Source: Gnetum montanum (lineage: Eukaryota > Plantae > Gnetophyta). From it: 64,000 nt of DNA. A program made the position numbers and the translations under genes. The DNA lies in NCBI GenBank assembly GCA_015680685.1, contig MNCI01001817.1:2634-66633 (forward strand). The letters are read 5' to 3'. Positions 1,547-42,800 of the stretch are shown here, piece after piece (position 1 is the stretch's first letter; each line of letters starts with the position of its first letter). The notes under the pieces are model-generated. The model was not told the origin of the DNA. It saw nothing but the letters and a program-made list of their open reading frames with translations, and searched no databases.

Positions 1547-2173
1547 TGTGACATACGATTATCGAATGTCATGATAAACATGAGATATATGTTATATTAG
1601 ACATTAGGCATAAAAAGATAACATAACAAATGTCAAATATATGCTATATTAGGCATTATGCGTAAACACATAACATTGCAAATGTCAAATATATGTAACA
1701 TTTGACATTAAGTGTAATGGAAATAATAGGGAAAATGCAAAAGGAAAGGAGAAAATAATTCTTTGGTGATGCAAAATAGTATATCTAGATCATGCTTTGA
1801 GAGTGTTTCTTGGGATTTTTCCCTTCGACATTGATCCTTTAGAGGCAATCCAACACTACCATCATAGTTAGGCCTACAACAAGCCAAAGGGAATGGCCAG
1901 TCCTCTTCCTATTCCACTTCACCTAACACTCATTACTTGCCTTTACTAGCTCTATAACTCCATGCTAATATGACCTCTAATGCCTAGTTATAAATACCTT
2001 AGGTCAAACACCCAAGGATCACCTCGAGAGATATGTCCATTTTTACAATACACCCTTTTGAGTCTTAATTACAACAAACCCTTTCAGGTCTTGTTACACT
2101 AATCTTAATATTAGTTATGAAGAGACACTATCTTTGTTATGCAACAGCATCATTTAGAAATAAGGACATTATA
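1547..2173 (-). mobile_element. Solo LTR of the same family as the LTRs at 2199-2625 and 6386-6958 (older, more diverged copy)
   Basis: Reverse complement aligns end to end with 6386-6958. Flanks are TACAA (1542-1546) and CACAA (2174-2178), a near-perfect 5-bp TSD. Contains an internal ~52-bp tandem triplication at ~1575-1715. Confidence 0.85.
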
Positions 2174-2198
2174 CACAAGGAATAATCATCACTTCGAG

Positions 2199-2625
2199 TG
2201 TCACATCCCCATTCCCAAATGATGCAGTTGCCTAATGAAGATGGTGTCTCTTCATAACAAATGTTATTGTCATCTTAACAAGACCCAAAAGGGTAGTTGT
2301 GATTAAGACCCGAAAGGGCATTTTGTAATAATGGATGTGTCTCTTGAGGCAACCTTTGGGGGTTTGACTTAAGGCATTTATACCTAAGGTTAGAGATCAT
2401 GCTAGCATGGAGTTGCAGAGCCTGGAAAGGTGAGTAACGGGAGTCGGGTGAAGCAAGACAGGAAGGGGACAGGGCCACCCTTCTGGCCAAGTTATAGGCC
2501 TAACCATGGTGGCAGTGTTGGATTGCCTCTAAGGGATGGATGCCAAAGGAANNNNNNNNNNNNNNNNNNNNNTAATATATGATATATTTGATGTTTGTCA
2601 TGACATCCAAGGATGGGATGTCACA
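2199..2625 (+). repeat. 5' LTR (with assembly gap 2552-2572)
   Basis: Matches 6386-6958 on both sides of the N run; TG...CA ends; followed by PBS. Confidence 0.9.
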
Positions 2626-2627
2626 AT

Positions 2628-2639
2628 TGGTATCAGAGC
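2628..2639 (+). promoter_or_regulatory. Primer binding site, initiator tRNA-Met
   Basis: TGGTATCAGAGC 2 nt after the LTR end. Confidence 0.95.
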
Positions 2640-3685
2640 AAACCATGACCCAAGGACCATTTAGAACCATGAACTTGATGATGAACCTTGAAGCCACAAC
2701 ACATGGAAAGCCATTGAACATCACCAAATGTACCATATATTTGTAATGCAAGTTAGAAGATACCTTTCCATTGACTTTGTGAACAATGGATCAGGCATCT
2801 AGATCTCAGCAACCAACAAAATTTCTTTCATGGATATCATTAGCCGATGAAGATTTGATCACACCTCTTCAAGCTTCATCAATTACAAAAAAATGTTGGT
2901 AAGATAATGATACACTAGTCCAGGTAACTCTTACCCATATTAATACTATAATTATTAATTGATTAGGGTTATTGTTGAATTTCTTTCAAGAAAGTTAGTA
3001 ACCATGACCTGAATTGATCTTGTTTTCTTAAAATTCATTCTCCTAGTAATCTAGAAGAATTTAAGTTACCATATGTCATCCTATAAATGTTAGTTCAAAA
3101 AAATAGGCTAGCTTGGTCCTTTTTAAAATCTACAACTATGTCCAACACGTAGTACTTGTTGAGATGATTCCAACGATACAAATTTCGTCTAAATCGGACT
3201 TACGATTTGGGAGATATTGATGTTTAAAGTTTCTATAGCCTCTATAGCTCTATAGCCTCTGTGCAAATTTTAAAAAATAATAATAAGTGCAAACCATGCA
3301 ACCATTGTTTGTAGGGGCTGGCCATGTTGCCCCTTCTCAAGGCCACTGCCCTCAACTAACACTTGCTTCCCGCTAACAACTACCTCCCTTGCATCGTCCG
3401 CCTCGCCTACCTACATAGCCTATGAAATTCTTGCCCTCATGCACTTCCATCAGCCTAGCCTTTGCGGCATTACTTGTTACTCCTTGCTACTTCTGCAAAA
3501 TGAAAACCCTCATCCGTGATATTCACCACATTCTTCATCGCTAATTGATTGCATCGCTGCTGCTTCAACACCGCCCATCATTGCCTTTTGCTCGATCCAT
3601 CACCGCCTTTCACTCCACCCATCACTGCCATCCACACTACCCATTACTACCTCCCGTGCCATCTATCACTACCATCCACGTCACC

Positions 3686-3795
3686 CATCACTCCTCTCGT
3701 GCTGCTCATCACTCCTCTTGTGCTGCTCATCACTACCTCCAACGTTGTGCTCATCACTCCTCTCGTGCTGCTCATCACTACCTCCAACGTCGTGC
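3686..3795. repeat. Minisatellite of 21- and 24-bp units (A-A-B-A-B)
   Basis: CATCACTCCTCTCGTGCTGCT and CATCACTACCTCCAACGTYGTGCT units. Confidence 0.9.
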
Positions 3796-4584
3796 AAATT
3801 CTCCGTTATATAATAGAAATATTTTAATTACTTATCAATTAACAAAAAAATTTGAAATTTTCGTCAATTAACAGAAAATTCAAATCTTCATCATTAAACT
3901 GTTAGTTTAAATCAGGAATTTGCAAAAATAATTTTCAAAATTAGAATTTTGCATGGTGGTAGCAATAGATATAACAATTTCACAATTAAGAACAATTACT
4001 TTGGAGTAGAACTAGGATGGATGACCTCTCAGAAAGTCTTATTTTTCGCGCTAAATGTCTTAGACTCCAAAAGCCATAACTTTTGATTTCGAAAGCCTTT
4101 TTTAGTAAATGAAGAGTCGTTTCCTATAGTTTTCAACCTTCTAGACACAATAGTAATCCCAAAAATTAGGTTTTACTCATTGCCCAATATAGTGCCTTGA
4201 GATCATTAAAAGTTTAATTTTCACACAACTTGAGCATACGATGTCCATTTTCAACATATAAATAGTCATTTCTAACATTTTTTACCCTTTTGAACTCAAT
4301 GGTGGGGTTAGATTTATTATCTAGGAACCCTATAATTCAATGATATTATAAATTCAACATTTTTAAGATTTAGTACATAACTCTTATAGATAGTCTTAAG
4401 ATCACTATGACATGTTATTAGTCACACTATCGGAGTTAGTGTTCTCAAGGGGGGTAGAAAGGTTATCAAAAATAATATAGTTAAATATTACTAAAAATTA
4501 GGTAATGTAATTATATATTACTAAAATTAGATAATATAGTTACATATTACTAGAATTATATGATGTCGTTAACTATTAGTTATT

Positions 4585-4663
4585 TAGTTGATGTAGTTGA
4601 TTATTAGTTGATGTAGTTGATTATTAGTTGATGTATTAGTTAATGAATAGTTGATGTATTAGT
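4585..4663. repeat. Short tandem repeats (TAGTTGATG / TATTAGTTGATG)
   Basis: Directly visible upstream of the CCR4-like ORF. Confidence 0.8.
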
Positions 4664-4755
4664 TGGAGAATTAGTTTAAGAAATAGAACAATCTTCAACC
4701 ATCAAGAAAAAGGTATATTAATCCATCCTATAATTAAAACATAGGACAAAATAAC

Positions 4756-5946
4756 ATGGAGACACAAAATCTTGTTTCAACAAGGAATATGATACTCATG
4801 AAGAGAAATGATCCAGACAAGAATCCAAGAATAGAAATGAAAGTTGCAACATACAATGTGCTTACAAGATCCCTAGTGAGTGAGAAACAATATCTTCTAT
4901 GTCCATCATGGGCCTTGGATTGGCACGAATATTAATACCCATGTATCTTAGCAGAATTAAAAGATTTGGATGTTGATTTCTTATGCTTACAAGAAATCTT
5001 ACCATGGAAATTTTTATATCAATTTCAACCATATTTGGAAAAGATGGGATACAAAGGTATTTATAAGCAAAAAGGTTCTTATGGAAGTTCTTCTTTTGAG
5101 CCGTATATATTAGCATATTGTAGGAATTACAACATGGATGGTTGTGCAATCTTTTATAAAAAAAAGCCAAGTTTGAATTGGTACAAAGATTTGAATGGAG
5201 TTTAGAAAATGTGATTTTTTGAAATTCCAGAACTTCAAGCAATGGGAAAGAAAGAACAGTCAAGATTTTAGAAAAATCACATAGCCCTAGCAGTGATTCT
5301 AAAAGTTCATCTATTAGGAAGATGTGTATGCATGGTTAACACACATTAAATTGCCAAACCAACATGTTCAGATGTTAGACTTTGTCAAGGAGCATACTTG
5401 ATTAACCAAATAGAAGAAAGTTTGAAGAAGAAGTTATCCCTAAGTTGTACCAATCCAGTTCCATTTATTCTTTGTGGAGACTTCAATGCAAAAGTTGGAA
5501 GTAGCATTTATTAATTTCTAAAATATGGATATGTACAGGAATCTTTGGAAGATGAACTTGACTTGAAGAAGATGTTTCCATCAATTCAGCATGCAATTCC
5601 ACTATCCAGTGCATATTCTACTTACTTTGAATTTTCAGTAGATAATTCAGATTCTAGAATTCAAGAACATATGATGTTGATGGATAGCACTCATCAAGAA
5701 CCACAGTTTACAAATTATACTACAATGATTAATGAAGATGGTTCAACAACATTCTTCATTGAGACTTTGGATTATATTTGGTATGATACTTGATTCTTTC
5801 AAGTTACCAAGTTACTAGAGTTGATTTCTAAAGAAGAAGTTGAGAAGAATCAAGATCAAGCCTTGCCATCACGAACAAGACCATCTAATCACATATCACT
5901 TATAGTAGAATTACAGTTACTCCCATCAATTCATAAGATTGATTAG
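4756..5946 (+). pseudogene. Intronless CCR4-like deadenylase (EEP exonuclease-endonuclease-phosphatase domain), disrupted
   Basis: Motifs in CCR4 order: KVATYNVL, CPSWALDW, DFLCLQE, MDGCAIFY, KNHIALAVIL, VNTH, PFILCGDFN, HAIPLSSAY, EPQFTNYT, FIETLDYIWY, LPS..PSNHISL. Stops at 4933, 5269, 5347, 5512 and 5791, plus a compensating frameshift pair in the A-run (~5160) and T-run (~5218). Confidence 0.92.
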
Positions 5947-6385
5947 GATCAAGAAGTATCTCACTCTTCCTTTTATTTGAAGATCTTATTATTTTATTCA
6001 TTGTTTAATTTATATTTCAATTAGATTAATAAAATATCTAAGGAAATGCAAGTTGGAAATGAAGAATTTTCCCTACCTTCACTTGGATAATCATATATGA
6101 GTTGCACATTGTGTGACCCTGGTTAGAACTAGTGATTGGTAGTTAGTAGATCTTTAATTCACTTATTGTCATTATCTTGGAAAATGAAATAAGTATCAAG
6201 AAAGTAATTTTGCATATAATCTTTCTCACATATATCTTATTTGCAAAATAAGCAAGAGACAACTTCAAGATCAAAGGAGGAATCAAATTATTGAAGCACA
6301 CAATCATGAAAGAAAGCATTGGAGCTAGAAGAAGATAAAGAACATGGATTCGTTCAAGGATGAACAAAACCTAAGGGGGGTAGAT

Positions 6386-6958
6386 TGTCACATCCCCATT
6401 CCCAAATGATGTGGTTGCCTAATGAAGATGGTGTCTCTTCATAAAAAATGTTATTGTCATCTTAACAAGACCCAAAAGGGTAGTTGTGATTAAGACCTGA
6501 AAGGGCATGTTGTAAGAATGAACATGTCTTTTGAGGTAACCTTTGGGGGTTTGACCTAAGGCATTTATACTGGGGGTTAGAGGTCGTGCTAGTATGGAGT
6601 TGCGGAGCTTGGAGAGGCAAGTAGCAGGAGCTGGGTGAAGGAGGACAAGAAGGGGATTGGCCCATCCTTCTGGCTGAGTTATAGGCCTAACCATGGTGGC
6701 AGTGCTAGATTACCTCTAAGGGATAGATGTCAAAGGAAGAAAACCCCAAGGAACTCTCTCAAAGCACTCTCTAAATACACCTTTCCATATCAATAAAGCA
6801 TTCTTTTGTTTCCTTTTTTGCATTTTTTCTATTATTTCCTTTATACATAATGCTGAATATCACTTATATTTTGCATTGGTATATTTTCTCTGTATGCATA
6901 ATGTCTAATATATGGTATATTTGATGTTTTCCATGACATCCAGGGACATGATGTCACA
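6386..6958 (+). repeat. 3' LTR
   Basis: Follows the PPT; TG...CA ends; AATAAA at ~6792. Confidence 0.92.
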
Positions 6959-7529
6959 CCAAGAAAAGAAGAAAAGAAAAGAAGGATGTAGGTAGGAACT
7001 TATTTAGAGGGGTACCTTCACACATAAGTAATATGTCTTTCTAGCCCTACAACTAGTGCTTATAGCCCATGAGATTATCAAAGGGGTAAGCTTTGAATTC
7101 ATGTTGTGTTTTTTTTTTCTAAGAACCACATCATATAGAGGCATGCTTCCTTTTATGGCAAATGATAGGAATGATGATATACCAATGAGGAGCCATAGAA
7201 CTGAAGAAGAAAGTTGAGAAAAGAATACAAAAAATCTCCTTGAGGTCATTACCTTTTCCATTCCCTCTTGGTTCTTTCCCAGTTCATTGGGTAATAAGAT
7301 CACATGTTACTTTTAGTTTTTTATGTGAAAGAGCCTTTATGTTTCCATAATGTAGACTCCACATGGAATAGATGGAATGGGTGGATATCATGAATTCACT
7401 ACCTAATGCCACTAGAAAACTGATAGAGTGTTAGTAGAGAACATAATCCAAGGATGAAGTTGATCATTTATAATCAATCATAACTTTGATAGTTGTGTTC
7501 AACAATTTTCAGAATTTGTAGTTTCCATG

Positions 7530-8465: not shown

Positions 8466-9860
8466 CCATGGAACAAAATCGAAGAAGTCAAATAAGACTA
8501 AATAAAAATAAGAAGGAAATGAAAATATATAAAATAATTAGTAAAATATAAAGAATATAAAAAGTATATAGGAAACATTACAAAAAGAAGAAAATTTTTT
8601 TATCCTTGTCAAGGTATTATGGTAGATGGGTATCTTCACCCCGACTAAGTTGAAAGGAGGAGATTTGGAAAATGGAGTGAGCTTGTTCTTGATCAAAGGT
8701 GCTAGTATTATGGTTGGTTACTTAGAAGTCCAAGAATGATTTAAGTTACTAGATGTTGACTAGCATGTGTTTTTGAGGGCTTATTAGGTGAAAATTTATC
8801 ATAGCCCCAAATGGAAAACTTGAGTGGATCATGTAAGGTCCTTCTCGTAGTGTATAGAACTTAATTCGTTGTGGCACATGCATGGGATTCCAATAGAGAA
8901 TCTTGTCTTCCAGTTCGAATATAACTTACCTAATCCATGTGCCATGACATTTTTTATTGTGTGCTTTGGACACTTCATTCATCATTAGCACTATTTTTTG
9001 ATTTTTATCTAGTACGTTAAGTATCATGAGTCATTCTTTTTATGCTAAATTAATGTCTAAGTTAAGTTCATAGGTAATTATGAGTGTATGGAGTTTAGTT
9101 TGAATTGGAAGTTTAGATAACTTTCCTTATACTAACTCATATGAAGAGTAGCCTATATTAAGTTTCCATGTTGAGTGATATTCCCTAATGAATTGTGATT
9201 CATTAGGCCCCAATATCGTGTACATGATATCGAGTAAGCGATATCGTGGCCTAGCTCGCGATATTGAATGTGCGATATCGCGGTTCCCATGTGAGCAAAT
9301 AAATACACAATGGGGTGCATAGGAAAGTAATAGTAAGTTAGTTTTCAGTCAGTAGATAGAAGTTAGTTCATTTTTAGTTCTTCTCAACACTTTCTCCCAG
9401 TGCATGCCCGCAGTGTCACTAGTTCTTCTCAACACTTTCTCAACACGAGCATACAAGTGTGACTACTTGGTATCCTAGTAGTGTACGTAGGCCATGCACT
9501 TGGTAACCCTAGTGGTAGTTGTGCATGAGGTACAAGATGTGTACAGATGATTAAGGAATGAATGCTCATCACACTTAAGCTAGCTTAGGCTCTCTCTCCC
9601 TTTTCCTCTTAGCTTAATTAAAGTTATTTTCCAATTGCCTCCAAGAGTAGCACTAGGTTAGAAACTACATCATACACCTCACTCTGGACTAAACCATACG
9701 TGACAAAGCAAATACTAGTCTAGGTGGGAAGACAACAAACTGTGATCAGCAAGTAACTATCTAGATACCATAGCTAGCCCGTCTGCAGAGTTTGACCAAA
9801 TCATTCATGAAACTCTCGTATTCTTATGGTTGAGTGTAGGTGTACCTCACCACTCATCAT

Positions 9861-9878
9861 TGGCACCGTTGCCAGGGA
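9861..9878 (+). promoter_or_regulatory. PBS (tRNA-Asp type, Athila-like)
   Basis: Decayed TGGCGCCGTTGCCGGGGA immediately after the LTR. Confidence 0.85.
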
Positions 9879-9992
9879 GAATGCTAGTTATTTAGATTAG
9901 TTATATCACACAAGATTTCTGTAAAAAATTATTCACGATATATCTCTTAGAAAAGAAATTAATTTTAATTAAGTCACAGATAGTTCACAACA

Positions 9993-12329
9993 ATGTCTCT
10001 CTCACAAGACTCTGACAACACAACAATGAGTAAGGTAATTCATTGGAGAACCAACAACTTTTATGATGATGAAGATAAAGTTTGGAGTACTCAACCTTAT
10101 GCAGGAGTCCCCTACATTCATGAACATTGCAATGATACTCAAGGATTCTTACCAACCAACTCTGACACCTCTAGTAAGGATGAGACATCCGATAGAACGA
10201 GGAGGCCTGAAAGGCCTAGGACCTTCTCGATAACTAACAAGAACTTATTTGGGGATGATTGGAAGACTTACAAAAGTCATAATGAGTTTTATAGTTCCCT
10301 CTCTTCCTCTACTCCTTCAATGTTAGATTGTGACATGGATGACTATCTTTCAAGGGATTGGTGTAGAACTAAAATCCGAGCTCACAAAGAAAATTGAGAA
10401 CGCCAACATGAACAAGGACAACATCGTCCCAATGCACAAACTCACAACCCACTTAGTGACAATGAACCCCTGCTGGCCACTAAGAGCCTAATGCCTATAC
10501 AAGAGGCCATTCAAATATCCTGCAGCCATCACAAGAAAAGCCATCTACACAAGCTTGACTTAAACAACTTTCCTAAGTTTTCCGGAGGCTATGATTTAGA
10601 TTCGCAACATCATCTACAAGCCTTCTACGATTCCTGTGTATGGAACAATATTGATAATGGGTGGCAAAAACTTAAGCTCTTTCCTATAACACTTGTTGGC
10701 TAAGCAAAAGTGTGGTACAGATCGTTAAAACCAAAATCAATCCGTAGTTGGCCAACAATGGTAGAACTCTTCAACGAAAGATATCAAACTTATGCAAGAG
10801 TGTGAGCCTTGAGGAAAAAAATCCAAGAGTGGAAACAAGAGCAACATGAACCCTTGGACATGGCCTTAGAAGAAAGATATTATGCATTGTTAAACAACTA
10901 CCCAGGCCATGGGTTCTCTGAGGAGAGGCTAGTGTACCATATCATAGATGGGCTCCGTAATGAAATAAGGGAAAGCCTAGGGATGTATGCCTGAGGTCAA
11001 CTATACAAGCTACAAACCCATTAACTCTAAGAGCTTATTAAGCGGGTAGCAAAAGAAGAAGGAGAAATGGCTAAATGGGAGAATGTTGAAAGCTCTCAAT
11101 GGGACCAAAATCTCGACTTAACAAAGGTCCGTATCCATAAAGAGGAGAAATCAACTCACCTAGAGGAAGTGCAAGCATTTCTACCTTTGCCAATGCAACA
11201 ATCACTAGATGAAATCATGGAAAAAATTAATAAGATGACGGAGTGGGTGCATGGAAAATATGGAGAATATGCTAGCAATAGTAGAGCCACAACTATGCCA
11301 AATCAAGAAACAAGATAGGACACCACGCAACAATCAGAACAAAGGGTAGAAGATAATAAGAATAAGAACTCAATTGCCAACTTCCCATATCAATGTAATG
11401 TCTATCTATACGATCACCCCAAAGGCCAATGCCTAGTTTTGTCACATTTACATGAGCATTAGGGAGGAATGTTACACCTAGATTTCGTACAGAAATATTG
11501 GGTTCAACCACAATGGCAAAAGCCCCAGTCATGGGGGAAGGCATCACCAACTTGACCATATCCTTTGTATGTCCCAATGCCAAATGCTTACTATGTTCAA
11601 CATCCTATTTCTCCAACCGGATCATCATCCTCTACTTCACCTCATTGTTATCATTTTTTAGACTACTATCCACTCATACGCTCTTCGCCAAGGTCGCCAC
11701 CTCATGTATCTTACACTTTTCCTCAACAATAATATTCTCATCCTTCACCTCCTTCTACATTACCACCAATTGTACTTGAAGGGTTTGCACCACAGCATTA
11801 ACCCATGAATGTTACTTGTGCTACTACTAACAACAATAATTGAAACCCACCTCACCAAAGGTGTCCCTTCTTTAGACGTGACCATTGAAAGGGACATCTC
11901 AATTCCGAAACCACTGCACCCTCCAACTCAGCACAAGTTCAACACTGTGGTGCATCTTCCTCTTCGAACCTAGCACCTCATGTTACTTTATCAGGGCCAC
12001 CAATCAATACTCCAACAACCATGCAGCCTAGTGAATCTAGCCACAAAGGAAGACATATCAATCCTTGCATACCATCTTATAGTCACGAGTGCCATAGTGG
12101 GTTAGCTCCTTATCACATAACCACATCTTATAATCTACCTCACTATGCCTACTACAATCAAGTGTGTGAACCCCAATTTGGGTATATTCCTACCACCACC
12201 TCAAAAGACACCCGATGGTTTGGATATGATCGGACTTCAATGTTTCCAAAATGCTTGGATCCAAACCTTCCATTTATTAATTCTAGCCATGCTGAACCGT
12301 TTAGCTATGGGGGGTATCCTCCATTCTAA
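9993..12329 (+). pseudogene. Degenerate retrotransposon gag with Pro-rich tail
   Basis: FPKFSGG..DSQHHLQAF, KLKLFPITLVG.AKVWY, SIRSWPTM.ELF, QEWKQEQHEPL..ERYY.LL..YP.HG motifs, interrupted by stops. Confidence 0.85.
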
Positions 12330-13789
12330 TAATAGTAGATTAATAAATTTTATTTGTTTCTTTAATTTTTCAACTTTTTGTTTTCCAGTTTTTCACCTTT
12401 TAATTTATTGCTTTATCTTTTTGTCTGTTTATCTTTTTATGAGTAATCTCATCTATGAATAAAGCACTCATGTGACTCATTGGTTGAGGTGTTGTTCTCT
12501 GCTATTAAGTCTCAGGTGACTAATTACTTGAACAACGTGCCCATAACATCCACCTACCCATTCCATTAATAAGAGGTTCTACCCTAGGTACAATGATGTT
12601 CCTAATCATTAAAACTTAAAGTAACCTTGTGTTTATTATACCTAGAGCAAAGAAGGATGGACTAAGCAGGAATGGCCAGGGTGTGACCTCAAGGGGACTT
12701 GTGGATTCTCTTTGGTGATATCTATAGGAGTTATCATGCAGCTTGGTTGTACTAAGATCCTTGTAGATCTAATGAAAAATGGGAGTAAGAGTAATCAAAA
12801 GGCACTCAATCAAGGAAACTCAATGCTATTCTAGGGGTTCCCACTAGAAAGACATGCACCCATGCATGAAGGTAGGTGGCTTCTCTGGCTTAAGCATTCA
12901 TTCCATCAAAAAAAAAAGAGAAAAGATCAAGACAAAAGTGCCGTAAAGAAATTTTAAATCACTCCTCCCTTGAATGAAACACCAAGTGATCATACACCTT
13001 ACTATCATGATCCTCTTATGAATGTCCACCATGGGAAAAAACAATGCGATGTCATTGATCAAAGGAATGAACTTGGTCCTAATTTTTAAGTGACAGGTTA
13101 ATGACACATTAATCATGCCTTACACTGAGGATTCATTATGCCCTAAGCCAGTTACCTCATGTCCCAATCTCTGCAATCCCTTCTACAATTCACCTCATCT
13201 CACTATTCATGAAGTTGTGACTCGTGTCTTATGTAGCATTGAATTTATACCTCATCACAGTGGTATCTACATATGTGTGTTTTGTGGAATTGGTGTGAAT
13301 TACATTTAACCCTTCTAGTGCCTACAGACATTTTAAGGTGTGGTTACGCAAGGGCATTATAGGTTGGAACCTACTTTGGGGAGGATCCACTTGCATAACC
13401 CTTGTAATCTACACTCACAACACATCAACATCACATCATTTTATACCCTCCAAGAATTACAATACTCTTTCCCTCATTATATTTCTAGTTCAAACATTCC
13501 TATGAACCAACATGTGTCCTTTCTCCTCATCTGATTCATGCATTCCATTGCTAGATTCTACACCATTATATTTTTTGTGTCTTCAAGACTATTTAATATT
13601 ACTCTAAACCTTTTACACCAACTTCAAGTGCTTCATTTTTGAGTTTAGAATTTTAGAAATTTATCAATTTTTCTAAGTACCCTACTTTAAACAAGCCATG
13701 ATATTGCGTATGCGCTATCATGTCTGATGTGATATCATGGTCATGCTATCGCGTACGTGATATTGCGTCACACACGACTATATATTTAG

Positions 13790-13790
<1 letters not shown>

Positions 13791-13825
<35 letters not shown>
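13791..13825. repeat. Poly(C) tract, 35 nt followed by N
   Basis: Directly visible, just downstream of TATATAT at ~13779. Confidence 0.9.
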
Positions 13826-14301
13826 NCATTTTCAACTGTTCACGTAGGGGAATTTTTTAAATCTTCTTCTACAACTCACGACTTGCACACCTCTTGTCCC
13901 AATAGCCATAACTCGCTCACTAGCACTCTGATTATTATTCTGAAAGAACCTACTTGAACCCGGAGTGTTCAACATAGTCATGTGGGAGGGGTACACTCTA
14001 AATTGCTTATAAATTTTTTGAAATTCATCTGAAGGATACTATAAAGGGTAATTAATTACAAAAAATGATGATAAACATGTGCCAAAAACAATCTTATCTC
14101 CTCACCTACACCAGGAAATTAAATTTTAAAAACACCTAATCAAATTAAGGGGCCCAATATTAAAACTCTTAGGGAACATTTCCACAAGATTTTCTAACTT
14201 TGGATCACATGAAATAAGAAATGCATTCATTAAGACAAAAGTAAGATATAACTTAAATTTTGTAAACAACCTTACTAATGGTCGGCCTTGTGTGATTGCA
14301 A

Positions 14302-17085
14302 ATGGCCCCTAAACATGAAAAACAAGAAGGACCCTCTCAAGGTGTGTCTAATCAACCTAGGAGAGGTAGAGGACAAGTGTCTCCTGAACAACATGCAAAG
14401 TAGGAGGCGCAATCATTTAGCATCCATTAAGATATTCCTGTTACTATGCAGTTAGAACAAGCGAAAGGAGGAGCTGCTGAAGCGCCTGAATAGGGACAAC
14501 ACCTCATGTTGTCCCCAAAGTGTGTCCAAGCTATTTGAGAAAGGTCCACGTCAGCAGCTGTGATCATGGAATGAAACTTTGGACCTTTCACGAAATTCAC
14601 TCCTAAGGCTGTTAGGAACCAACTCAAAGGGTCTCCATTATGGCCTATCCTCTCTGAAAGTGGTGCCTAGTACTTAGGAGAAACATACCAATTTTGACAT
14701 AATAAGGAAGAAGGCACCATAGTTGACATTTGTGGTGTGTCTGTAGATTTTTCTGCCAAGGCCATTGCAGAAGTGTTGAACCTTCTAAATACAGGGCCAA
14801 AAGTTGCTCACCTATCCACTTGCTCTGATGCTGATGTGCAAAGACTTTGGTTGGACAGGGCGTACAGCAAAGAGGACAAGACATATGGAGAGTTGACATT
14901 GGAAGAAAGGATATACTTCAAGATTGGCACTTACCACATCTTCCCCATGAGAGGATTAAAAAGAATATCAATGTATGTGGCAAGAGGAAGTGTGATATTG
15001 ATGGTAAAGACTAATGCTTACCTTCCTCATCTGTATCTCATGGATATCTTGAGACGATTTGAAGAACGCAAGATAGGGAAGTTCACATTGCCCTTCCCTT
15101 GTCTCATCAGGAAGCTATGCAAATGTGCTGGTATTCTGGGGTACACCAATGACGTTCTTAGAAGAGCCCAAAATGCTTCGTTCGCTGAACTACTAAAGCC
15201 ACCAGCCCCAAGGAAAAGTGCTGGTGAGACACTAGAGGCAGAGCAAGAACAGACGGTGGGGCCCATTGTAACTCAAACTGCAGGGCCTAGCCAACACCCA
15301 GACACAAGGCCCATTCAACAACAAGCAGGGCCCAACACAAGCCAGCAAGACCAACCGTCACTACCGTCGCAGGATTATTGACTGTCGATGAGCCATCTCA
15401 GAGCCATTGCTAAGACAGTCAGTTGGGGAAGTTGTGCTGATGCTAATCTCTTTTGCGTCATCAATGACACCGCACAGTCCATAATTCCTATTGATCATGC
15501 ATGAGGCAAGGTGTCCATTCAAACAGGGGGAGTGGAGACTCATTGGTACAACATATTTCAAGAAATGCTACATCTTTCCAGGTGCAATTGGAAACAGGTG
15601 AAGGGGCCATAGTGGTGGTTATGCAACACCAAGATGTAGCAAGAGCCATAGAAGTGGTCACAGATCACATCAAAGAATCTTTCAATGTCCCTATTGTGCC
15701 ACTGGCAGATTTCACAGGAGCATGGGATTCTCAAACTCTAGCCAGTCCCTCAATGACTCTTACAGAGCAGGATGTCCTTGATTGATTGCTGCAGATAGGA
15801 CAAGTAATGAAGTCCTTTTTCGACATCCCACAAGATGTCATGACAGCACAATCAGAGCTCATCTCCACCAAAGGAAAATTGGTCATGGCAGAGATCAGGG
15901 TCAAGCATGTGGAAGTGGAGTTGGCAAGGCTCCAAGAAAGGCTCATTACCTTGCAAGCTACACAGTGAGAGCCATCTCAGTTTGTTCCCATAGACCAATT
16001 GGACACTTTTAGGATGGAACAGCTTAATAAACTATTGGTGGATAATAAAAGAGTGGCGGAGGAAAAGGAGAAGGCTAACTGGGATGCCTCCAAGGCGCAA
16101 GCGTAAACCTATGCGCACACCAAGGCACTCAGAGCCTTACAGGAAGAGAATAAACAACTTGCTGCTGACAATCTTTGGTTGACCACTATGGAGAAATAGA
16201 AGAATGTTCTTGAGGAAAAATTTCAACAATTATAAGAATAGTTGGTCAGGGTCAACGAAGACATGAACCATTTGGCCAGAGAGAATCAAACCCTCTTAAT
16301 GGAGGAGGTACGTGCAATGCGTCAGAAGACAGCCATCAAAATAACCATGTGGCAAAATGAGGCCAAGAAGCATGAAAAGTTTAAAAAGCACTTTAGAGAC
16401 TAGGTGGGGATGTACATGCAAGTCATAGAAAATGAGATCCATATGGCCAAGGCCCACATCAACACTTTCAGTGCTCAACACACTAATTGGCAGGCCATAT
16501 TGGACACATGCATTTGCCCACTAAGCAAAGCTTAAAAGCCTAAACCTGTAGATTCAAGATCTCACAGAGTACATGGAATTGGAAAACTTGCGATATGCCA
16601 ATCTACCCATGTTGACAGTAGGACACCAGAGAACAGAGCTCAAGAAGTAGGTAGCTACCACCTATGCTAAATATGAAGCAGAATTTGCGAAGCACAAGAA
16701 AATGTTATAGAAGCTAGAAGTCACAAATTCTAAACTAGAGGTGGTTAAGACCAGCTACCAAGGCCAGAAAGATGTCATAGCAGACTTGGCTTGACAGCTT
16801 ATAGATTTTCAAGAGTACAAGGACAAAGCCAGAGCCTATGAGGAGGAACAACGGTTGTTTGTAGCCTGGTACATCAAAGCAAATAAGATGTTCCCACAAC
16901 TACCATGTCCATGGGAGGTGCCAACTCCATCAAATGTTGGAGCATCAACATGGATGGCAGAGGATCCCTGAACTAAAGAAGAAAAGCTCCAGGCACTCCC
17001 TCAGAGCCATCAAATCCCAAAGCCCAAAGCACAAGACCAAGAAAAGTGACCCATGAAGGATCCTCCGCCATCTGGAATCACATGA
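14302..17085 (+). pseudogene. Athila-type accessory ('env-like'/plant transposon protein) ORF with C-terminal coiled coil, disrupted
   Basis: Starts MAPK...RGRGQ. Contains VSVDFSAKAIAEVLNL and HIFP...YLPHL...LPFPCLIRKLCKCAGI, typical of plant LTR accessory ORFs, then a Q/P linker and long heptad-rich segments. Confidence 0.7.
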
Positions 17086-18142
17086 GTTCCACAAAATTTT
17101 GTAATTTTGTGATTTTGTTTTCTTTTTTGTGTCTATCCTAATTTTTTTCTATTCAATTCTCCACAGTAGCATGAATATATTCCTAGTCAGTCAATAATCC
17201 CATACCTCTCCACTGTGTTATCAATGGAGCTTGTTCTCATTTTGTTTGACTCGAGGACAAGTTTTTATTCAATCGTGGGGGTATGATGAATCATGATTCA
17301 TTAGGCCATGATATCAAACCTTCAATATCGCGTACACGATATTGGGTATGTGATATCGCAGCCTAGCTCGCGATATCGGATGCACGATATTGTGGTTCCT
17401 GTGTGAGCCTATAAATACACAATGGGGCATACAAGAAAGTAATAGCAAGTTAGTTTTCAGTTAGTAAATAGAAGTTAGTTCATTTTTAGTTCTTCTTAAC
17501 CCTTTCTCCCAGTGCATGCTCGCAGTGTAATAATTGTAATTGTATGGCACCTTTATTCAAGTGTGATGTATTTGGACACTCACATGACCAGAAATAAAGA
17601 TCAAGATTAGTTCATCATTGTAGCATTTACTTAGTTTAATTATTTAATTGTTATTATTATTTATTACTTTTGTAGTTAGTATCTCTTCACCCTAAACTCC
17701 TTAAACATGGAATGAGTACAACTTAATCATGAGCATTCAAGTGTGACTACTTGGTATCCAAGTAGCGTACCTAGGCCATGTGCTTGGTAACCCCAGTGGT
17801 AGTCATGCATGAGGTCCAAGATGTGTACGGATGATTAAGGAACAGATCCTCATTACACTTAGGCTAGCTTAGACTCTCTCCCCCTTTTCCTCCTAGCTTA
17901 ATTAAAGTTATTTTCCATTGCCTCTAGGAGTAGCACTAGTTTAGAAACTACATCATACACCTCACTCTAGACTAAACCATCTGTGACAAAGCAAATACTA
18001 GTCTAGGTGGGAAGACAACGAATTGTGATCAATGAGTAACTATCTAGATACCACAGTTAGCCCATCTGCAGAGTTCAATCAGATCATGGATGAAATGCTC
18101 ATATTCGTATGGTTGAGTGTAAGGGTACCTCGCCGCTCATCA

Positions 18143-21100
18143 TGCCCAAAGGACATCGTTGAGTTTGGTGCTCTAGTCTTTCCTATATCTACTAATAGTT
18201 CATGTTAGAATTTGTGTGATCTTCTTACTGGTTACTGCTACTTGACTATTAGCTTAGGGATGATAGGGTGTTGTGAGTTTATGTTACACCGCTAAGCATG
18301 GCATTAACTTTTAAAAGGTACCTTCTATGAAATGTGTTCCATTGTCAAAAATTAGTGCTCTAGGTATACCAAACCTATTTATCACTTATTGTTGAAAGAA
18401 TCAAGCTATAGTAGTAGAGGTACAATCAGAAACTATTGTGGCTTTAGCCTACTTGGTACAGTAGTTAAAGCAATAATAATGTACAATTTCTTATTGGACA
18501 TGGAAGTGAAATCAATTCTCTGAAGATTAAAAGGCTTCAATGGTTGAATCTACTATTGGAGGCCTTTCATTCTGGTTGTCATTCCTGCATCTCATTGACA
18601 CCTCCCTCAAGAATGGAAAAAATGATGAGCATTCCTAAATATTATTGGTCAAAAATATCCTACCTTTAGGATCTTTGTGGCTGTCCTTCTTCCTACATAG
18701 TAATCCTCATAACGATCCTTGTGAGCATTTTGGAGAACTCTTAGTTGATCTACATTAGGTACACACCATCATACTAGACCACCAACACAAACCTTATAGA
18801 GGTTTCCTTTGATCTCTATGTAATGTTTGACTTGGTGAAGAAATTGATGTTTCTTCCTATGATCCCATTCAGTAGGATCCTTCTGCATGAGTAGATATGA
18901 GAGAAGTTTAGTTATCCTTAATGCATGAACTTTAGTTATCTTAGCAAAGAGAAGTTTATCTAGAAATTGATCAAATAAGAGCTCTTTGTTATCATTGCTA
19001 TCCCATCGTAATTGAGATAAATGATCTACAACTATATTTTTAGTCCCTTTTCTTTCCACCATTATAAGATCAAACTCCTATAAGATCACCAACCACTGTA
19101 TAACATAGGAGCTTATCATAGGCTTATTTATTAGGAAGCAAATTACACTATGATTACAAAAATAGGATATCCAAGCACATAGTGCCTGAATCTTTCTAAG
19201 TCATACATCACCACCATAAACTCTTTTTCCATAGTAGTGTAATTGAGTTATGCACCCATAATGCTTCTCCTTGTACAATGGATATAATATGGGAATTTTT
19301 AATCATCCATTTGTATCAATACCATCCCTAATGTATAGTTGGATGCATCTATCATGATGTGAAATGGTTTGGACCTTTCAAGAATACATAGAATTAGAGT
19401 CTTTGCAAGCTTTTGCTTCAACTATTAAAATGCTTATTCACATTCCCTAATCCATTCAAAGACTACCTCATTCTTCATAAGCTTTACTAGTGGCTTGGCT
19501 ATTTTAGAGAAGTTTTTAATGAAATGCCTATAGTAACCAATATAACCAAGGAATGACCTCATATATTTGACAATTTGAGATTATCTAGTTATTTCCTATA
19601 TGATCCATATCTTTTCATGGTCTGCCTCAATTCCTTTTTCTAAAATTCTATGTCCCAAAACAATGTCTTCTTGGACCATCAAGTGTCTTTTTTACTAGTT
19701 GAGTTGTAGGTTTATCTCCATACATTATTTTAGTACTTGCTCAAGATGGTCCAATGCTTGTTCAAAGTTAGTGCCATAGGTGGAAAAGTCATCCATAAAG
19801 ACTTTTATACCGCTACCAATTTATTGCTAAAAGATGTTTATAACTAAGTATTGCAAAGTTACAAGGGCATTACAAAGGCCAAAGGGCATCTTCTCATATG
19901 TGAAAGTTCCCCACAGACTTGTAAAGGTTTTTTTTGGCTTCGTCTTCTAGAGCAATTTGTATTTGCTTGTACCCAGTGTATCCGTTGAAAAAACTATAAT
20001 AATTCTGCCCTGCAGTTGTATCCAACACTTGGTCCATGAATGACAATGAAAAATGATCTTTGAAGGTAACCATGTTCAATAGTCTAAAGTTGATATAGGC
20101 CCTCCATTATCCTCTTTTCTTCAATATAATGATGAGTGGGCTTACTCATTCACTATCTACCACTAGATAAATGAATCCTACATTAAGAAGTTTTTCAACT
20201 TCATTTTTTAAATCTTGTTTCAGTTTCAAATTCAACCTTCTTTATGGTTGTCTCTTGGATTTAATAGTGGAATCTATATAAATCCAATGTTGCCATATGT
20301 GTGGATCAATTTTTGTTAATTCATCATATGATCAAGCAAAGGCTATTGGCCATTTGTTTACTAGTTTTAGTAGCTTCCCCTTTTTTTCCTTAGTGAGGTT
20401 AGCATTGATGATTACCAACTTACCATTATCAAGAAATACATATTCCAATTCATTTTGGATTCTTCCTTGTATTCCATTTAGAAGAGTTGGTTTTGAATTT
20501 TCTCCATTTCATCCATCTTATTAATATAAGCACTTGGGAGGATTTTAACTAGTTCCATGCACATTGTTAAATTAGAGCTAGTATCAATTGTTAGCCACTA
20601 GGTACCCTCTTGTTTTCTGACTGCTGCATACATGCACCTTTGAACATTTGATGTTTTGGAACACTTCTTACATGTTGTGATGAATGTGTTCTTTATAACC
20701 CATATTTTTTACATGTAATGGTACCATGTGTCACTATACACAATGCATAAAACACTCTTCTTCTTAACCTTTCCAAATTCATTTTCCTTGGAGATTTCCA
20801 AATAAAGATCTCTAATCCCTAGCTTGACATTAATTATGCTTAGCTAAGTCCTTTTCATGATAATTGGAAAGTCCCCCTTATATTTGTTCTTATGGATGAC
20901 GAGGAAATCCACTAGATAGGACCGTCCACAAATGATGGTCATAATATCCTCCACCAATTCCAAAGGAATGTTGATGGATTGATCAACAAGCTCTAATCTA
21001 ATGTTACATTTCTTTAGTATAGGGAAATTCCTAGTTTTATACAATTCTTAAGAAATTAAGTTCACCTTGAAACTTGAGTCTAGTAGAGCTTTGCACAAAC

Positions 21101-39800: not shown

Positions 39801-42800
39801 ATATGTATCATGAGCAGTTTCAAGGTTTTTGGCACTTCAAGTGCATATTTTTCTGCAAGGAGCAACACATTCTTGGGGAGCTCGTAGTACATTTTTCAAG
39901 AGCTCAACAATGCATTCTTCAACTCATTTTGAACCACTTTAGTAATCTATTTTAGACATTCTTTAGTTCATTTGTTTTATTTGACAGTGAATGAATATTG
40001 CAGTGTAGCTTATGTTTGAAATTTTCTGTAATGTATATGAGAGTATAAATAATTAGTTTATGTTGATGTTCATAGTTAATGCAAGATTGTTATATTAATA
40101 TTTTTAGAAATTTCAATTTTAAAGTTGAATATATGGTCTTTTGAAAATGGATTTTCAAATTTTTTTCTTCTTAATTGCATATACTTTTGAAAATGTGATT
40201 CCAAGTTGCAATTTGTGATCTGGAATCTTAGGAATTGAAAACGATCTACAGTCTGATCCGATCTTCATAAATTTGGGTGACACTGTAAACTATACCACAA
40301 GTCATGGTGAAGTTATGTGAAGTTTGCAGTGGAAAAAGGAACACAAATCAATTTGATTTTGAAATTATGTGATACATTGAATTCAAAGCTTTCTATCAGT
40401 GTGCAAAGGACAGATCAGTTGTCCAAAACAACATGAGCTTTGAAATTTGATGTATTTAGATTCAAACAAAGGGTTTTATGCCCTGCCTTTATGACATTGA
40501 GAAATTTAACATGAAATCAACTAGATCTAGATGTTTTTGCGCTTAGAATCAATATAAACATTCAGTTTCATGCCTCAAAGGCCTTGCAAACATTCAAATG
40601 ACAAGTGATTGTGAGATCAATTGGTATTGAGAGTGGGTTCAAAGAAGATCCACAAGCATCTCCTTCAAACCCTGAAACTTGAAAATCAGAATGTTATAGC
40701 TTAGATCTATGTAAGAAATTTATGATTTTTGCAAGATTCGAATCATAAATGCTTGATTTATATTCCGAATTTCCTATATCTGTTGATATTAAATTGAAAA
40801 TCAACATGCATGTAAACATATGTGAGATAAAATTTGAATTATGTGAGAATTAAGAGAGTAATTTGAAAACATTGAGAGATTGTAAAATCTCTTGGGATAT
40901 TTAAGACAATTGTGAGATGTATGAGATTGAAATTTGAGCTGATGCATTGTGAGAACTCAGCAGCATTTCATTTTGATTCTTTTCTAAAAATCTGAATAAT
41001 GAACACTCTTCTTCAGATCTCATCATCTACCAAGTGTCTTTTTGACCTCTATTTATAGTTTTAGAGAGAGGAGAAACTTACCACAAATGACATCATTACA
41101 TCATGAGGACTAAAGATATATTTGTATGGTTGACAAGCCAATGGATGGACAATTCCTTTTTCGTAGAACTGTAGCTCCTAGCTTGCATCTATTGAAGTAT
41201 ACTTTTCTTTGTCGTTTCCTTAGAGATTTTTGAATCTTCAATGATGTCCTTTTGATTGATGATGTTTTCCTTGAATTTGCTAGCGTTCACCTTTATATGA
41301 AAGTGTGTAAGGTTTGTAACATTAAAAGCACAAGAAATAGAAAGAGCTTTAGGTAACAAGAGTTTAAAGGCATTATTATTTACTTGTATTTTAAATGGAC
41401 CGATTCTCCTTTGTTTTAATTTGGAAAAGTTGTTTTTTTTGGGAAAAATGTTCGAGTGATATTATTCCAAAAAGAAGATGTACACATGTACAAAGTGGAT
41501 CATTGACCCTAGTCCACAAATACCCCATCCACATGACTCAGCGGTCACCTGCAATATTTCTGGTGAGCACCCACATGCTTGTGTAGTGCAGACACCTTGC
41601 GTCGCCCAAGAACCCACAACCCAAGGTCACAACCCAGCAACAAAAAATGAGGTGGACCAAACACAACAACCCCCACTAGCACCAGGAGCCCCCTCCCCTT
41701 AGTGGCTAGGCCGCACAACGCTACCGGGACGCGTCTAGCCTTGAACCACTACGTCTCGTAGTCTCGGCCAGCTATGACCTAGACCCCATGCTCTCAACCG
41801 TAGCCAAGGTCTCAGATGCAGCCATGCCAGCCGCAACTTGCTAAACCATTGTCCCAAGCCCAAGTGCCAATCGTTGATGGTTCTCTTCTCTGAGTTGTGC
41901 TAGGCTTGTCCAGTGCTCTGTGATCCTTGCTTCCATCCACTGGAGGTCTTGCAAGCGTGAGGCGTTTGCTTCCCTTTAGGCCTCTTGCCTCATGTTCTCC
42001 CACCTGAGTTGCCACTGTGCGCACTCCTCCAAGCACACTTGCTTGGCAGCTAGGCAACACTCTTCCAGCAGTGTGCTACCGTTGGCGCTTCGCTCTTGTA
42101 CTGGCTCCATGATTGTAGACAGGCCTAAAACTTCGTCCCCACCCAACTCAGGGCCCTGGCTATCCTGCATCTACACACTGGTAGCCTGTCGGTGGTGCTG
42201 TTGCCGTTGATGCACAAGTGGTGGCATTGGGTGGGCGATTTGCACACCTCCATGCCAAAGCACAAGAATCACCTCTGGGTGCTGCCCCAGCCGTTGCCTT
42301 CAAAGGGATTCCTAGAAAAATTGGGGTAGATGGACAGGGGAACCTTGTCGAAGATGCTTGAGGAAGGTGAAATGCACCCCCACAAGTTTGTGGGGGTACC
42401 CGGATTGGACAAAATACCTCTCCACTAGGAGCGCTGCGTCCCTCCAAACACCTTGCAATCCAGACTTCTGATGTGCCTGCTAGCAGTCCTGGGAAGAACA
42501 TCATCACGTCAGTCTGTGCTCGTGCAACTGGTGCCACAATCTCCCCTTCAGCCTCCACCCCTAGCGCAGCAGCTGATGCCTATATAGTTACTTCAATCCT
42601 CTTGCCCCTGTACTGCATAGTGTCTCCCACCCAGTTGTCATAGAATTGTTGTGTGGGCAAGTTTGGTTCACCTTCCAAGCATTTAAGCTTCTCCACCCAC
42701 CCCATCCTTTCAACTAACATCCATAGCTCGGGTAGTCTGAAGCATCCTATCCATGATGGCTTGAATAATAGCTGTTGTTCCATGACCTCAGTTGCCTTAG

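What the first reader, a model, noticed from the sequence alone, without database searches (positions are those of the whole stretch)
2199..6958. Non-autonomous LTR retroelement whose cargo is a CCR4-type deadenylase
Seen: a complete LTR-PBS-PPT-LTR unit with no gag/pol, holding one ~395-codon intronless sense ORF with the EEP/CCR4 catalytic motifs in order (YN, LQE, NTH, GDFN, LDYI, and SNH for the usual SDH). Established: CCR4 is the poly(A) nuclease of CCR4-NOT; plant CCR4a/b have introns and an N-terminal extension, both absent here. Inference: the protein is strongly diverged and has in-frame insertions (e.g. TMINEDGSTTF) while the active-site motifs persist, and the few lesions look like later decay. 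That fits long evolution under selection as a TE-borne enzyme rather than a fresh retrocopy. A TE-encoded deadenylase could trim host or TE RNA tails or interfere with silencing. A third, older LTR copy in this window shows the LTR family is multi-copy.
Basis: partly seen in the sequence, partly recalled or inferred. Interest (0 to 1): 0.9.

Follow-up and report, generated by a model that had tools for sequence, protein, structure and literature searches.

The report
Retroelement carrying a decayed CCR4 nuclease
A helper-dependent plant LTR retrotransposon has, in place of gag-pol, an intronless and now broken copy of the nuclease half of the plant poly(A)-removing enzyme CCR4. That copy had diverged very far from host CCR4 while keeping its active site, which is unusual cargo because host CCR4 is known to restrain such elements.

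Summary
Window 2199-6958 is an LTR-PBS-PPT-LTR unit with no gag/pol. The LTRs are 573 nt, K2P distance 0.13. The N gap lies inside the 5' LTR and hides about 167 nt; no reading frame is affected.

At 4756-5946 lies one sense-strand, intronless CCR4-type EEP nuclease domain. It is a pseudogene here, with five premature stops and two 1-nt frameshifts.

It aligns end to end with CCR4 nuclease domains (BLASTP E 1e-46) and shares a land-plant-only insertion, but it is only about 32% identical to plant CCR4a/b. Those are 70-78% identical among themselves. It lacks the N-terminal 225 or so residues, including the MYND-like finger.

Universally conserved residues are kept at 51 of 65 positions; plant-only invariant residues at 16 of 96 (P = 4e-15). 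The lesions fit neutral decay since insertion. So the gene was probably an intact, catalytically conserved nuclease when this copy inserted. It is not a fresh retrocopy.

The scan has noted the same architecture before on at least 13 other pieces of this genome, and 77 notes mention CCR4. No literature precedent was found.

Verdict: a dead member of a probably abundant non-autonomous LTR family with a captured deadenylase-type gene. Selection while transposon-borne and the gene's function remain untested.

The parts
1547..2173 (-). Older LTR of the same family, inverted, about 74% identical to the 3' LTR. It lies head-to-head with the element's 5' LTR, 25 nt away. It is context, not part of the element.
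   Evidence: the hairpin formed with the 5' LTR start is
2194..2198 (+). 5' flanking 5-mer TCGAG, a possible degraded target-site duplication
   Evidence: matches 3 of 5 positions of 6959-6963, and both mismatches are transitions
2199..2625 (+). 5' LTR (TG..CA), interrupted by the assembly gap
2552..2572 (.). Assembly gap of 21 N inside the 5' LTR, standing for about 167 nt (3' LTR positions 354-520)
2628..2639 (+). Primer-binding site TGGTATCAGAGC, 2 nt after the LTR. This is the usual plant initiator tRNA-Met type (from knowledge).
2640..4755 (+). Non-coding leader of 2.1 kb. No Pfam domain. Tandem repeats at 3574-3795 and 4472-4676, the latter just upstream of the ORF.
3975..4050 (+). Stretch that by eye resembles the 3' half of plant 5S rRNA (box C region). 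Rfam does not confirm it.
   Evidence: by eye and from memory; negative; other first-reader notes report 5S fragments in sister copies
4756..5946 (+). Intronless CCR4-type EEP nuclease-domain pseudogene: 390 sense codons, 5 premature stops, 2 single-base frameshifts, SDH changed to SNH
6373..6384 (+). Polypurine tract, ending one base before the 3' LTR
6386..6958 (+). 3' LTR, 573 nt, complete. TATA-like TTTATAC near 6563 and AATAAA near 6793, both read by eye.
6959..6963 (+). 3' flanking 5-mer CCAAG

Best explanation
This is a dead copy of a non-autonomous, helper-dependent LTR retrotransposon. It is LARD-sized: 573-nt LTRs and a 3.8-kb internal region.

Its only recognisable gene is an intronless copy of the nuclease domain of a land-plant CCR4a/b-type deadenylase. 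The copy is N-terminally truncated.

The gene most likely entered an ancestral element as processed host mRNA, by template switching during reverse transcription. This resembles maize Bs1 or retroviral oncogene capture (inference). It was then carried through many rounds of retrotransposition.

Over that history it diverged very fast from host CCR4, yet kept nearly all universally conserved EEP/CCR4 active-site residues. It was therefore under purifying selection as a working nuclease until about the time this copy inserted. Selection on the core is shown. That it acted while the gene was transposon-borne is inferred.

The protein lacks the MYND-like N-terminal region, which from knowledge tethers plant CCR4 to CAF1/NOT1. 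It would therefore have acted as a free-standing 3' exonuclease outside CCR4-NOT. Its substrate is unknown: poly(A) tails of element or host RNA are the leading guess.

Since insertion (LTR K2P 0.13) the copy has decayed neutrally and is non-functional.
For: Anatomy: LTR pair, PBS, PPT, and no gag/pol.

CCR4 identity:
- Full-length colinear BLASTP and tblastn matches to CCR4 nuclease domains, E 1e-46 to 1e-41.
- Pfam Exo_endo_phos matches on the pieces.
- PDB hits to CNOT6, CNOT6L, Ccr4 and Angel2. The N-terminal CPSWAL-W piece hits only CNOT6, CNOT6L and Ccr4.

Plant origin: it shares the land-plant-only insertion before EPxFTN, and has a NTH-x-x-A-x-P motif like Ginkgo and Marchantia.

Truncation: the match starts at Ginkgo residue about 225 of 586, and there is no N-terminal remnant upstream.

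Not recent:
- 32% identity to plant CCR4, against 70-78% among plant CCR4.
- Branch of 1.50 substitutions per site against a median of 0.24.
- Nothing above 50% identity among 1.84e9 representatives.

Selection on the core: 51/65 universal sites are kept against 16/96 plant-only invariant sites, Fisher P 4e-15.

Intact at insertion:
- Neutral decay at the LTR-derived rate predicts 2.6-4.1 stops (5 observed, P 0.12-0.38).
- It also predicts about 9 of 65 universal sites changed (14 observed).
- Both frameshifts sit in homopolymer runs.

No poly(A) tract follows the ORF, so an L1-type retrocopy insertion is not supported.

Family: at least 13 first-reader notes on other pieces of the same genome describe the same architecture, and 77 notes mention CCR4 in 913 windows. 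These are unchecked leads.
Against: Only this one copy could be examined. No second copy lies in the window, and none was retrievable from public collections.

The target-site duplication is not clean (3 of 5).

The substitution tree places the ORF outside land plants, next to a long dinoflagellate branch (UFBoot 85). A plant-plus-element clade is not rejected (AU 0.139), so plant origin rests mainly on one shared indel.

Selection on the core could have happened in an unsampled, fast-evolving host paralog before a late capture.

The ORF starts 2.1 kb downstream of the PBS, behind many upstream ATGs. How it would be translated from element RNA is unexplained.

The SDH aspartate is changed, and there are no expression or activity data.
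Confidence: 0.7

Rival explanations
1. Hitch-hiking cargo. A divergent host CCR4 paralog, which evolved under selection in the host, was captured fairly late. It has never mattered to the element, and the family spread despite the ORF, not because of it.
For: Plants do hold divergent CCR4-like paralogs that lack a recognisable MYND-like finger, for example Macadamia, Nelumbo and Macleaya at 49-62% to canonical CCR4. Trans-acting proteins are hard to keep under selection in non-autonomous elements (knowledge). The ORF sits far from the 5' LTR behind a long leader. The retention test cannot say where selection acted.
Against: No known plant paralog is closer than about 33%. A branch of 1.5 substitutions per site is far beyond any sampled host paralog. 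The ORF seems to have been still open and catalytically conserved at insertion. That is unexpected for a long-carried, unselected passenger in an abundant family.
Confidence: 0.15
2. Deletion derivative. The CCR4-like gene is an accessory ORF of an autonomous LTR retrotransposon lineage, and this copy has simply lost gag-pol.
For: Plant Ty3/gypsy elements often carry extra ORFs (knowledge). Another element in this window carries an accessory Transposase_32-like ORF. The 2.1-kb leader is repeat-rich and could be what remains after deletion.
Against: No gag/pol remnant is detectable. The other notes describe elements of about 5-6.8 kb with CCR4 as the only cargo, and none mentions an autonomous version (unchecked).
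Confidence: 0.1
3. Assembly chimera. The N gap joins the LTR of one locus to the body of another, so the complete element is an artefact.
For: The gap lies inside a repeated sequence, where assemblers and scaffolders often fail. The target-site duplication is imperfect.
Against: Both sides of the gap match the 3' LTR in the right order and orientation. Their divergences are the same: K2P 0.133 on the left and 0.148 on the right. The PBS follows directly.
Confidence: 0.03

Closest known systems
Maize Bs1 and other LTR retrotransposons with transduced host gene fragments (from knowledge)
   Same: A non-autonomous LTR element whose internal region holds intronless host-derived coding sequence in sense orientation. 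Capture was presumably by template switching on co-packaged mRNA.
   Different: Bs1 is low-copy and holds fragments of three genes. Here a whole catalytic domain of an RNA-decay enzyme is carried. It is very diverged from the host gene with its active site kept, and the family appears abundant (unchecked notes).
LARDs, large retrotransposon derivatives (from knowledge)
   Same: LTRs, PBS and PPT with a multi-kb internal region lacking gag/pol; mobilised in trans.
   Different: LARDs are defined as having no coding capacity. This one holds a recognisable enzyme gene.
Acutely transforming retroviruses that carry a captured cellular gene (from knowledge)
   Same: Replicative genes are replaced by a processed, truncated cellular gene between LTRs, and the element depends on a helper.
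   Different: This is an endogenous plant retroelement with no oncogene logic, and the captured gene has a long independent evolutionary history.
Plant CCR4a/b, the deadenylase of CCR4-NOT. AtCCR4a shortens LTR-retrotransposon RNA tails and suppresses Evade (PMC12501189).
   Same: The same EEP nuclease domain with the catalytic motifs in order, the CPxWAL-W motif and the land-plant-specific insertion.
   Different: About 32% identity. No N-terminal region or MYND-like finger. Extra insertions. Intronless. Located inside a transposon. Broken in this copy.
Cassandra TRIMs, which have 5S rRNA-derived sequence in their LTRs (10.1101/2023.07.14.548913)
   Same: Possibly a 5S-derived fragment inside a non-autonomous LTR element. 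This rests on by-eye reading and on the sister-copy notes.
   Different: Here the 5S-like stretch is internal, not in the LTR, and Rfam does not confirm it.

Membership tests
LTR retrotransposon, non-autonomous (LARD-like) | Two direct long terminal repeats with TG..CA ends | tested here: met
   353 alignable nt at 88% identity, E 3e-128; ends TGTCAC..GTCACA
LTR retrotransposon, non-autonomous (LARD-like) | PBS complementary to a tRNA 3' end directly after the 5' LTR | tested here: met
   TGGTATCAGAGC at 2628-2639. Complementarity to plant initiator tRNA-Met is from knowledge; no tRNA was compared here.
LTR retrotransposon, non-autonomous (LARD-like) | Polypurine tract directly before the 3' LTR | tested here: met
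   AAGGGGGGTAGA at 6373-6384
LTR retrotransposon, non-autonomous (LARD-like) | Target-site duplication of 4-6 bp | tested here: inconclusive
   TCGAG versus CCAAG: 3 of 5 match, and both mismatches are transitions
LTR retrotransposon, non-autonomous (LARD-like) | No gag, protease, RT or integrase | tested here: met
   No Pfam hit in any internal ORF of 30 aa or more outside the CCR4-like gene
LTR retrotransposon, non-autonomous (LARD-like) | Multiple copies, mobilised by an autonomous partner | not testable with these tools
   Three LTR copies in the window. At least 13 unchecked notes on other pieces. No partner was identified.
CCR4 (CNOT6-type) deadenylase, EEP superfamily | EEP nuclease domain, colinear over its whole length | tested here: met
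   BLASTP E 1e-46 over ORF residues 30-395; Pfam PF03372 on the pieces
CCR4 (CNOT6-type) deadenylase, EEP superfamily | Catalytic residues N (YN), E (LQE), H (NTH), D and N (GDFN), D (LDYI), D and H (SDH) | tested here: inconclusive
   All are present except the SDH aspartate, which reads N. One change in a copy that has decayed since insertion.
CCR4 (CNOT6-type) deadenylase, EEP superfamily | CCR4-specific N-terminal motif, as opposed to nocturnin, angel or PDE12 | tested here: met
   The piece 4756-4932 hits only CNOT6, CNOT6L and yeast Ccr4 in the PDB. Other pieces do not discriminate.
CCR4 (CNOT6-type) deadenylase, EEP superfamily | Docking module for CAF1/NOT1 (LRR in opisthokonts, MYND-like finger region in plants) | tested here: not met
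   The match starts at Ginkgo residue about 225 of 586, with no remnant upstream. It is therefore CCR4-derived, but not a CCR4-NOT subunit as defined.
CCR4 (CNOT6-type) deadenylase, EEP superfamily | Open reading frame and poly(A)-specific 3' exonuclease activity | tested here: not met
   Five premature stops and two frameshifts in this copy. Activity is not testable here.
Land-plant CCR4a/b clade | Groups with land-plant CCR4 in a tree | tested here: inconclusive
   The ML tree places it outside land plants, with a long dinoflagellate branch. The plant constraint is not rejected (AU 0.139).
Land-plant CCR4a/b clade | Land-plant-specific insertion before the EPxFTN motif | tested here: met
   Present in all 16 plant sequences and in the ORF; absent from all 28 non-plant sequences

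The most novel reading that the evidence does not exclude
An abundant non-autonomous LTR retrotransposon family keeps, under selection, a free-standing CCR4-derived 3' exonuclease as its only gene. The family uses it to alter poly(A) tails, either its own or those of host or helper RNAs. One example would be escaping or subverting the CCR4a-based deadenylation that plants use to suppress retrotransposons. That would make it a transposon-encoded RNA-decay enzyme.
Probability: 0.3. Interest if true: 0.85.

Novelty: new variant of a known kind. Interest (0 to 1): 0.6.

Why it matters
Gene capture by LTR retrotransposons is known. Captured pieces are usually fragments that decay as passengers.

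Here a complete catalytic domain of the main mRNA deadenylase has been carried in a gag-pol-less element. Its active site was preserved across a divergence larger than that between plant and animal CCR4.

Host CCR4a was recently shown to shorten retrotransposon RNA tails and suppress transposition (PMC12501189). A transposon-borne, complex-independent CCR4 would therefore bear directly on the contest between transposons and RNA decay.

If the family is as abundant as the scan notes suggest, it gives many copies of different ages. Selection on a transposon-borne host-derived enzyme could then be measured directly.

Tried and rejected
- **Search for other copies:**
  - The HMMER scan of 1.84e9 representatives with piece 4936-5202 gave only generic CCR4 at 50% identity or less. 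The long hits were Plasmodium CCR4.
  - The metagenome scan gave six generic eukaryotic CCR4 loci at 35-40%.
  - The search of earlier findings by sequence and by relatives were blank.
- **Host identification:** the L1 RT ORF had a best hit of 34% to Fagus, and the Atlas gave no taxon. The host stays 'a land plant'.
- **Atlas on piece 5515-5790:** nothing specific.
- **5S rRNA:** no Rfam hit at E up to 1 on 20 kb or up to 10 on 241 nt.
- **L1-mediated processed-pseudogene insertion into an older element:** rejected, because no poly(A) tract or flanking duplication surrounds the ORF.
- **Remnant of the CCR4 N-terminus upstream:** none.
- **Weak tblastn hit at 16847-17068:** stop-ridden and not EEP-like.
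- **Leader intron idea:** an exon-like ORF at 2786-2899 ends at a GT, and an AG lies at 4743-4744. The ORF alone has no Pfam hit. By eye, the reading across meets a stop before the ATG.
- **Ancestral codons at the stops:** I did not assign them and did not mend the frame. All read-through used X at each break.
Full report
**1. Anatomy**

Reading 1800-7400 and the repeat search show two direct repeats that begin TGTCAC and end GTCACA, at 2199-2625 and 6386-6958.
- The 3' LTR is 573 nt.
- The 5' LTR holds 353 nt before the N gap and 53 nt after it.
- These match 3' LTR positions 1-353 (88.1% identity, E 3e-128) and 521-573 (86.8%), in the same order and orientation.
- The 21 N at 2552-2572 therefore replace about 167 nt of LTR. 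They touch no reading frame.
- The two sides diverge equally from the 3' LTR (K2P 0.133 and 0.148). This fits a single LTR rather than a chimera.

Other structural features, read:
- The PBS TGGTATCAGAGC follows the 5' LTR after 2 nt. From knowledge, this is the usual plant initiator tRNA-Met type.
- The PPT AAGGGGGGTAGA ends one base before the 3' LTR.
- The flanking 5-mers, TCGAG and CCAAG, agree at 3 of 5 positions with two transition mismatches. A target-site duplication is possible but unproven.

LTR differences are 35 transitions to 7 transversions, with no internal indel. This is typical of methylated plant repeats. K2P of 0.133 gives roughly 5 My at 1.3e-8 per site per year and about 30 My at a conifer-like 2.2e-9. 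Both rates are from knowledge, and the host is unknown.

**2. No gag/pol**

The 3.76-kb internal region has no ORF of 30 aa or more with a Pfam match, apart from the CCR4-like gene. It holds tandem repeats at 3574-3795 and 4472-4676. The internal region occurs only once in the window, while the LTR occurs three times.

**3. The gene**

Frame 1 from 4756 reads 398 codons to the stop at 5944. It is interrupted by stops.
- Comparison of frames and alignment to CCR4 show that two of the seven in-frame stops come from a short frame excursion.
- A 1-nt shift in an A-run (about 5157-5165) and a second in a T-run (5215-5220) bracket 18 codons. In frame 3 these read like the CCR4 segment after DGCAIF.
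- The true lesions are therefore five premature stops (4933, 5269, 5347, 5512, 5791) and two frameshifts.

With X at each break, the 390 sense codons align end to end with CCR4 nuclease domains.
- The best hits are plant CCR4a/b: Nelumbo E 8e-46 and Ginkgo at 32% identity.
- tblastn of Ginkgo CCR4 covers its residues 203-582 in one frame with no intron-like break.
- The pieces hit Pfam Exo_endo_phos.
- In the PDB they hit Angel2, CNOT6L, Ccr4 and nocturnin. The N-terminal piece with CPSWAL-W hits only CNOT6, CNOT6L and Ccr4.
- The motifs YN, LQE, NTH, GDFN and LDYI are present. SDH reads SNH.
- The N-terminal 225 or so residues of plant CCR4, including the MYND-like finger, are absent. No remnant lies upstream.

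**4. Origin**

All 16 land-plant CCR4 sequences and the element ORF share an insertion of about 15-20 residues before EPxFTN. It ends in a similar M-D-x-(S/T)-x-x-E-P string. All 28 protist, animal and fungal sequences lack it.

After NTH, the ORF has x-I-A-K-P, like the I-H-A-N-P of Ginkgo and Marchantia and unlike the H-W-D-P of most others.

The ML tree gives no help. The ORF sits on a branch of 1.50 substitutions per site (median terminal branch 0.24), next to a long dinoflagellate branch. Forcing it with land plants costs 5.6 lnL and is not rejected (AU 0.139).

I take the indel as the better marker. The gene derives from a land-plant CCR4a/b-type mRNA.

**5. Not a fresh retrocopy, and not neutral drift**

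- Canonical plant CCR4 are 70-78% identical from Marchantia to Prunus. The ORF is 33% identical to them, about as far as plants are from animals.
- A scan of 1.84 billion representative proteins with the best-conserved piece found nothing above 50% identity.
- At sites invariant in plants and shared by 80% or more of non-plant CCR4, the ORF keeps 51 of 65 residues.
- At sites invariant only in plants, it keeps 16 of 96 (Fisher P 4e-15).

Neutral decay at the LTR-derived rate (0.067 per site) predicts two things.
- About 9 of the 65 universal sites would be changed; 14 are observed.
- There would be 2.6-4.1 new stops; 5 are observed, P 0.12-0.38.

So at insertion the ORF was probably open, with an almost untouched catalytic core, although it was already very far from host CCR4. 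That pattern requires long purifying selection on nuclease function. Whether this happened inside the element lineage or in an unsampled host paralog cannot be decided from one copy.

**6. The family**

The search of earlier findings lists at least 13 first-reader notes on other pieces of the same genome with the same description: a non-autonomous LTR element of about 5-6.8 kb whose only cargo is an intronless CCR4-type gene. Some mention a 5S rRNA fragment. In all, 77 notes mention CCR4 among 913 windows.

These are unchecked AI notes and I could not fetch their DNA. They raised my odds that this is a multi-copy family, but they are not a test. In this copy a stretch near 3975-4050 resembles, by eye and from memory, the 3' half of plant 5S rRNA. 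Rfam does not report it.

**7. Mechanism**

Shown:
- the element structure;
- the CCR4-derived, truncated, intronless gene;
- its decay in this copy;
- selection on the core at some stage in the past.

Inferred:
- Capture was by template switching on a co-packaged host mRNA. No poly(A) tract or duplication surrounds the ORF, which argues against an L1-type insertion.
- The element was mobilised in trans by an unidentified partner.
- The protein was a free-standing 3' exonuclease outside CCR4-NOT, because the docking region is missing.

Its substrate and its benefit to the element are unknown. Host CCR4a deadenylates and suppresses the Evade LTR retrotransposon in Arabidopsis (PMC12501189). That makes tail manipulation the most attractive hypothesis, but nothing here tests it.

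One weak point is that the ORF lies 2.1 kb behind the PBS. A spliced or internally initiated mRNA would be needed. I did not build a joined splice model.

**8. Comparison and novelty**

The closest known systems are:
- LARDs, which by definition have no coding capacity;
- Bs1-type transduction of host gene fragments;
- by analogy, helper-dependent retroviruses that carry a captured cellular gene.

Three full-text searches found no report of a transposon-borne CCR4. I rate it a new variant of a known kind.

**9. Limits**

- One copy only, and the host is unidentified.
Read-through used X at every break.

Noticed in passing
window 2106-2268: The start of the older inverted LTR and the start of the 5' LTR lie head to head, 25 nt apart. 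They fold into a hairpin about 160 nt long (-68 kcal/mol, z -10.7). The hairpin gives sub-threshold Rfam matches to the plant miRNA precursor families MIR7993 and MIR444. It could be a source of hairpin small RNAs against this LTR family.
   Followed up: partly
window 3975-4050: This stretch resembles, by eye and from memory, the 3' half of plant 5S rRNA including box C. Rfam finds no 5S match. Other first-reader notes report 5S fragments in sister copies.
   Followed up: partly
window 4472-4676: Arrays of 29-nt and 11/23-nt tandem repeats lie directly upstream of the CCR4-like ORF. TATA-like strings lie between them and the ATG. This may be an internal promoter or enhancer region.
   Followed up: no
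window 9211-18143: A second, unrelated LTR retrotransposon. Its LTR pieces are 86-89% identical and about 8.1-8.3 kb apart. It holds a 214-aa ORF (14737-15381) with a sub-threshold match to Pfam Transposase_32, a putative plant transposon protein.
   Followed up: partly
window 42000-48700: A GC-rich block (46-51% GC against about 35% elsewhere). It holds an L1-type reverse-transcriptase ORF (43594-44199, minus strand) whose best public match is only 34% (Fagus). A 402-nt tandem repeat with three copies lies at 47569-48673.
   Followed up: partly
proteins P0051, P0158, P0160, P0161, P0221: Several angiosperms (Macadamia, Telopea, Nelumbo, Macleaya, Tasmannia) hold a divergent CCR4-like paralog clade. 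It is 49-62% identical to canonical CCR4a/b and has no Pfam-detectable MYND-like finger.
   Followed up: no
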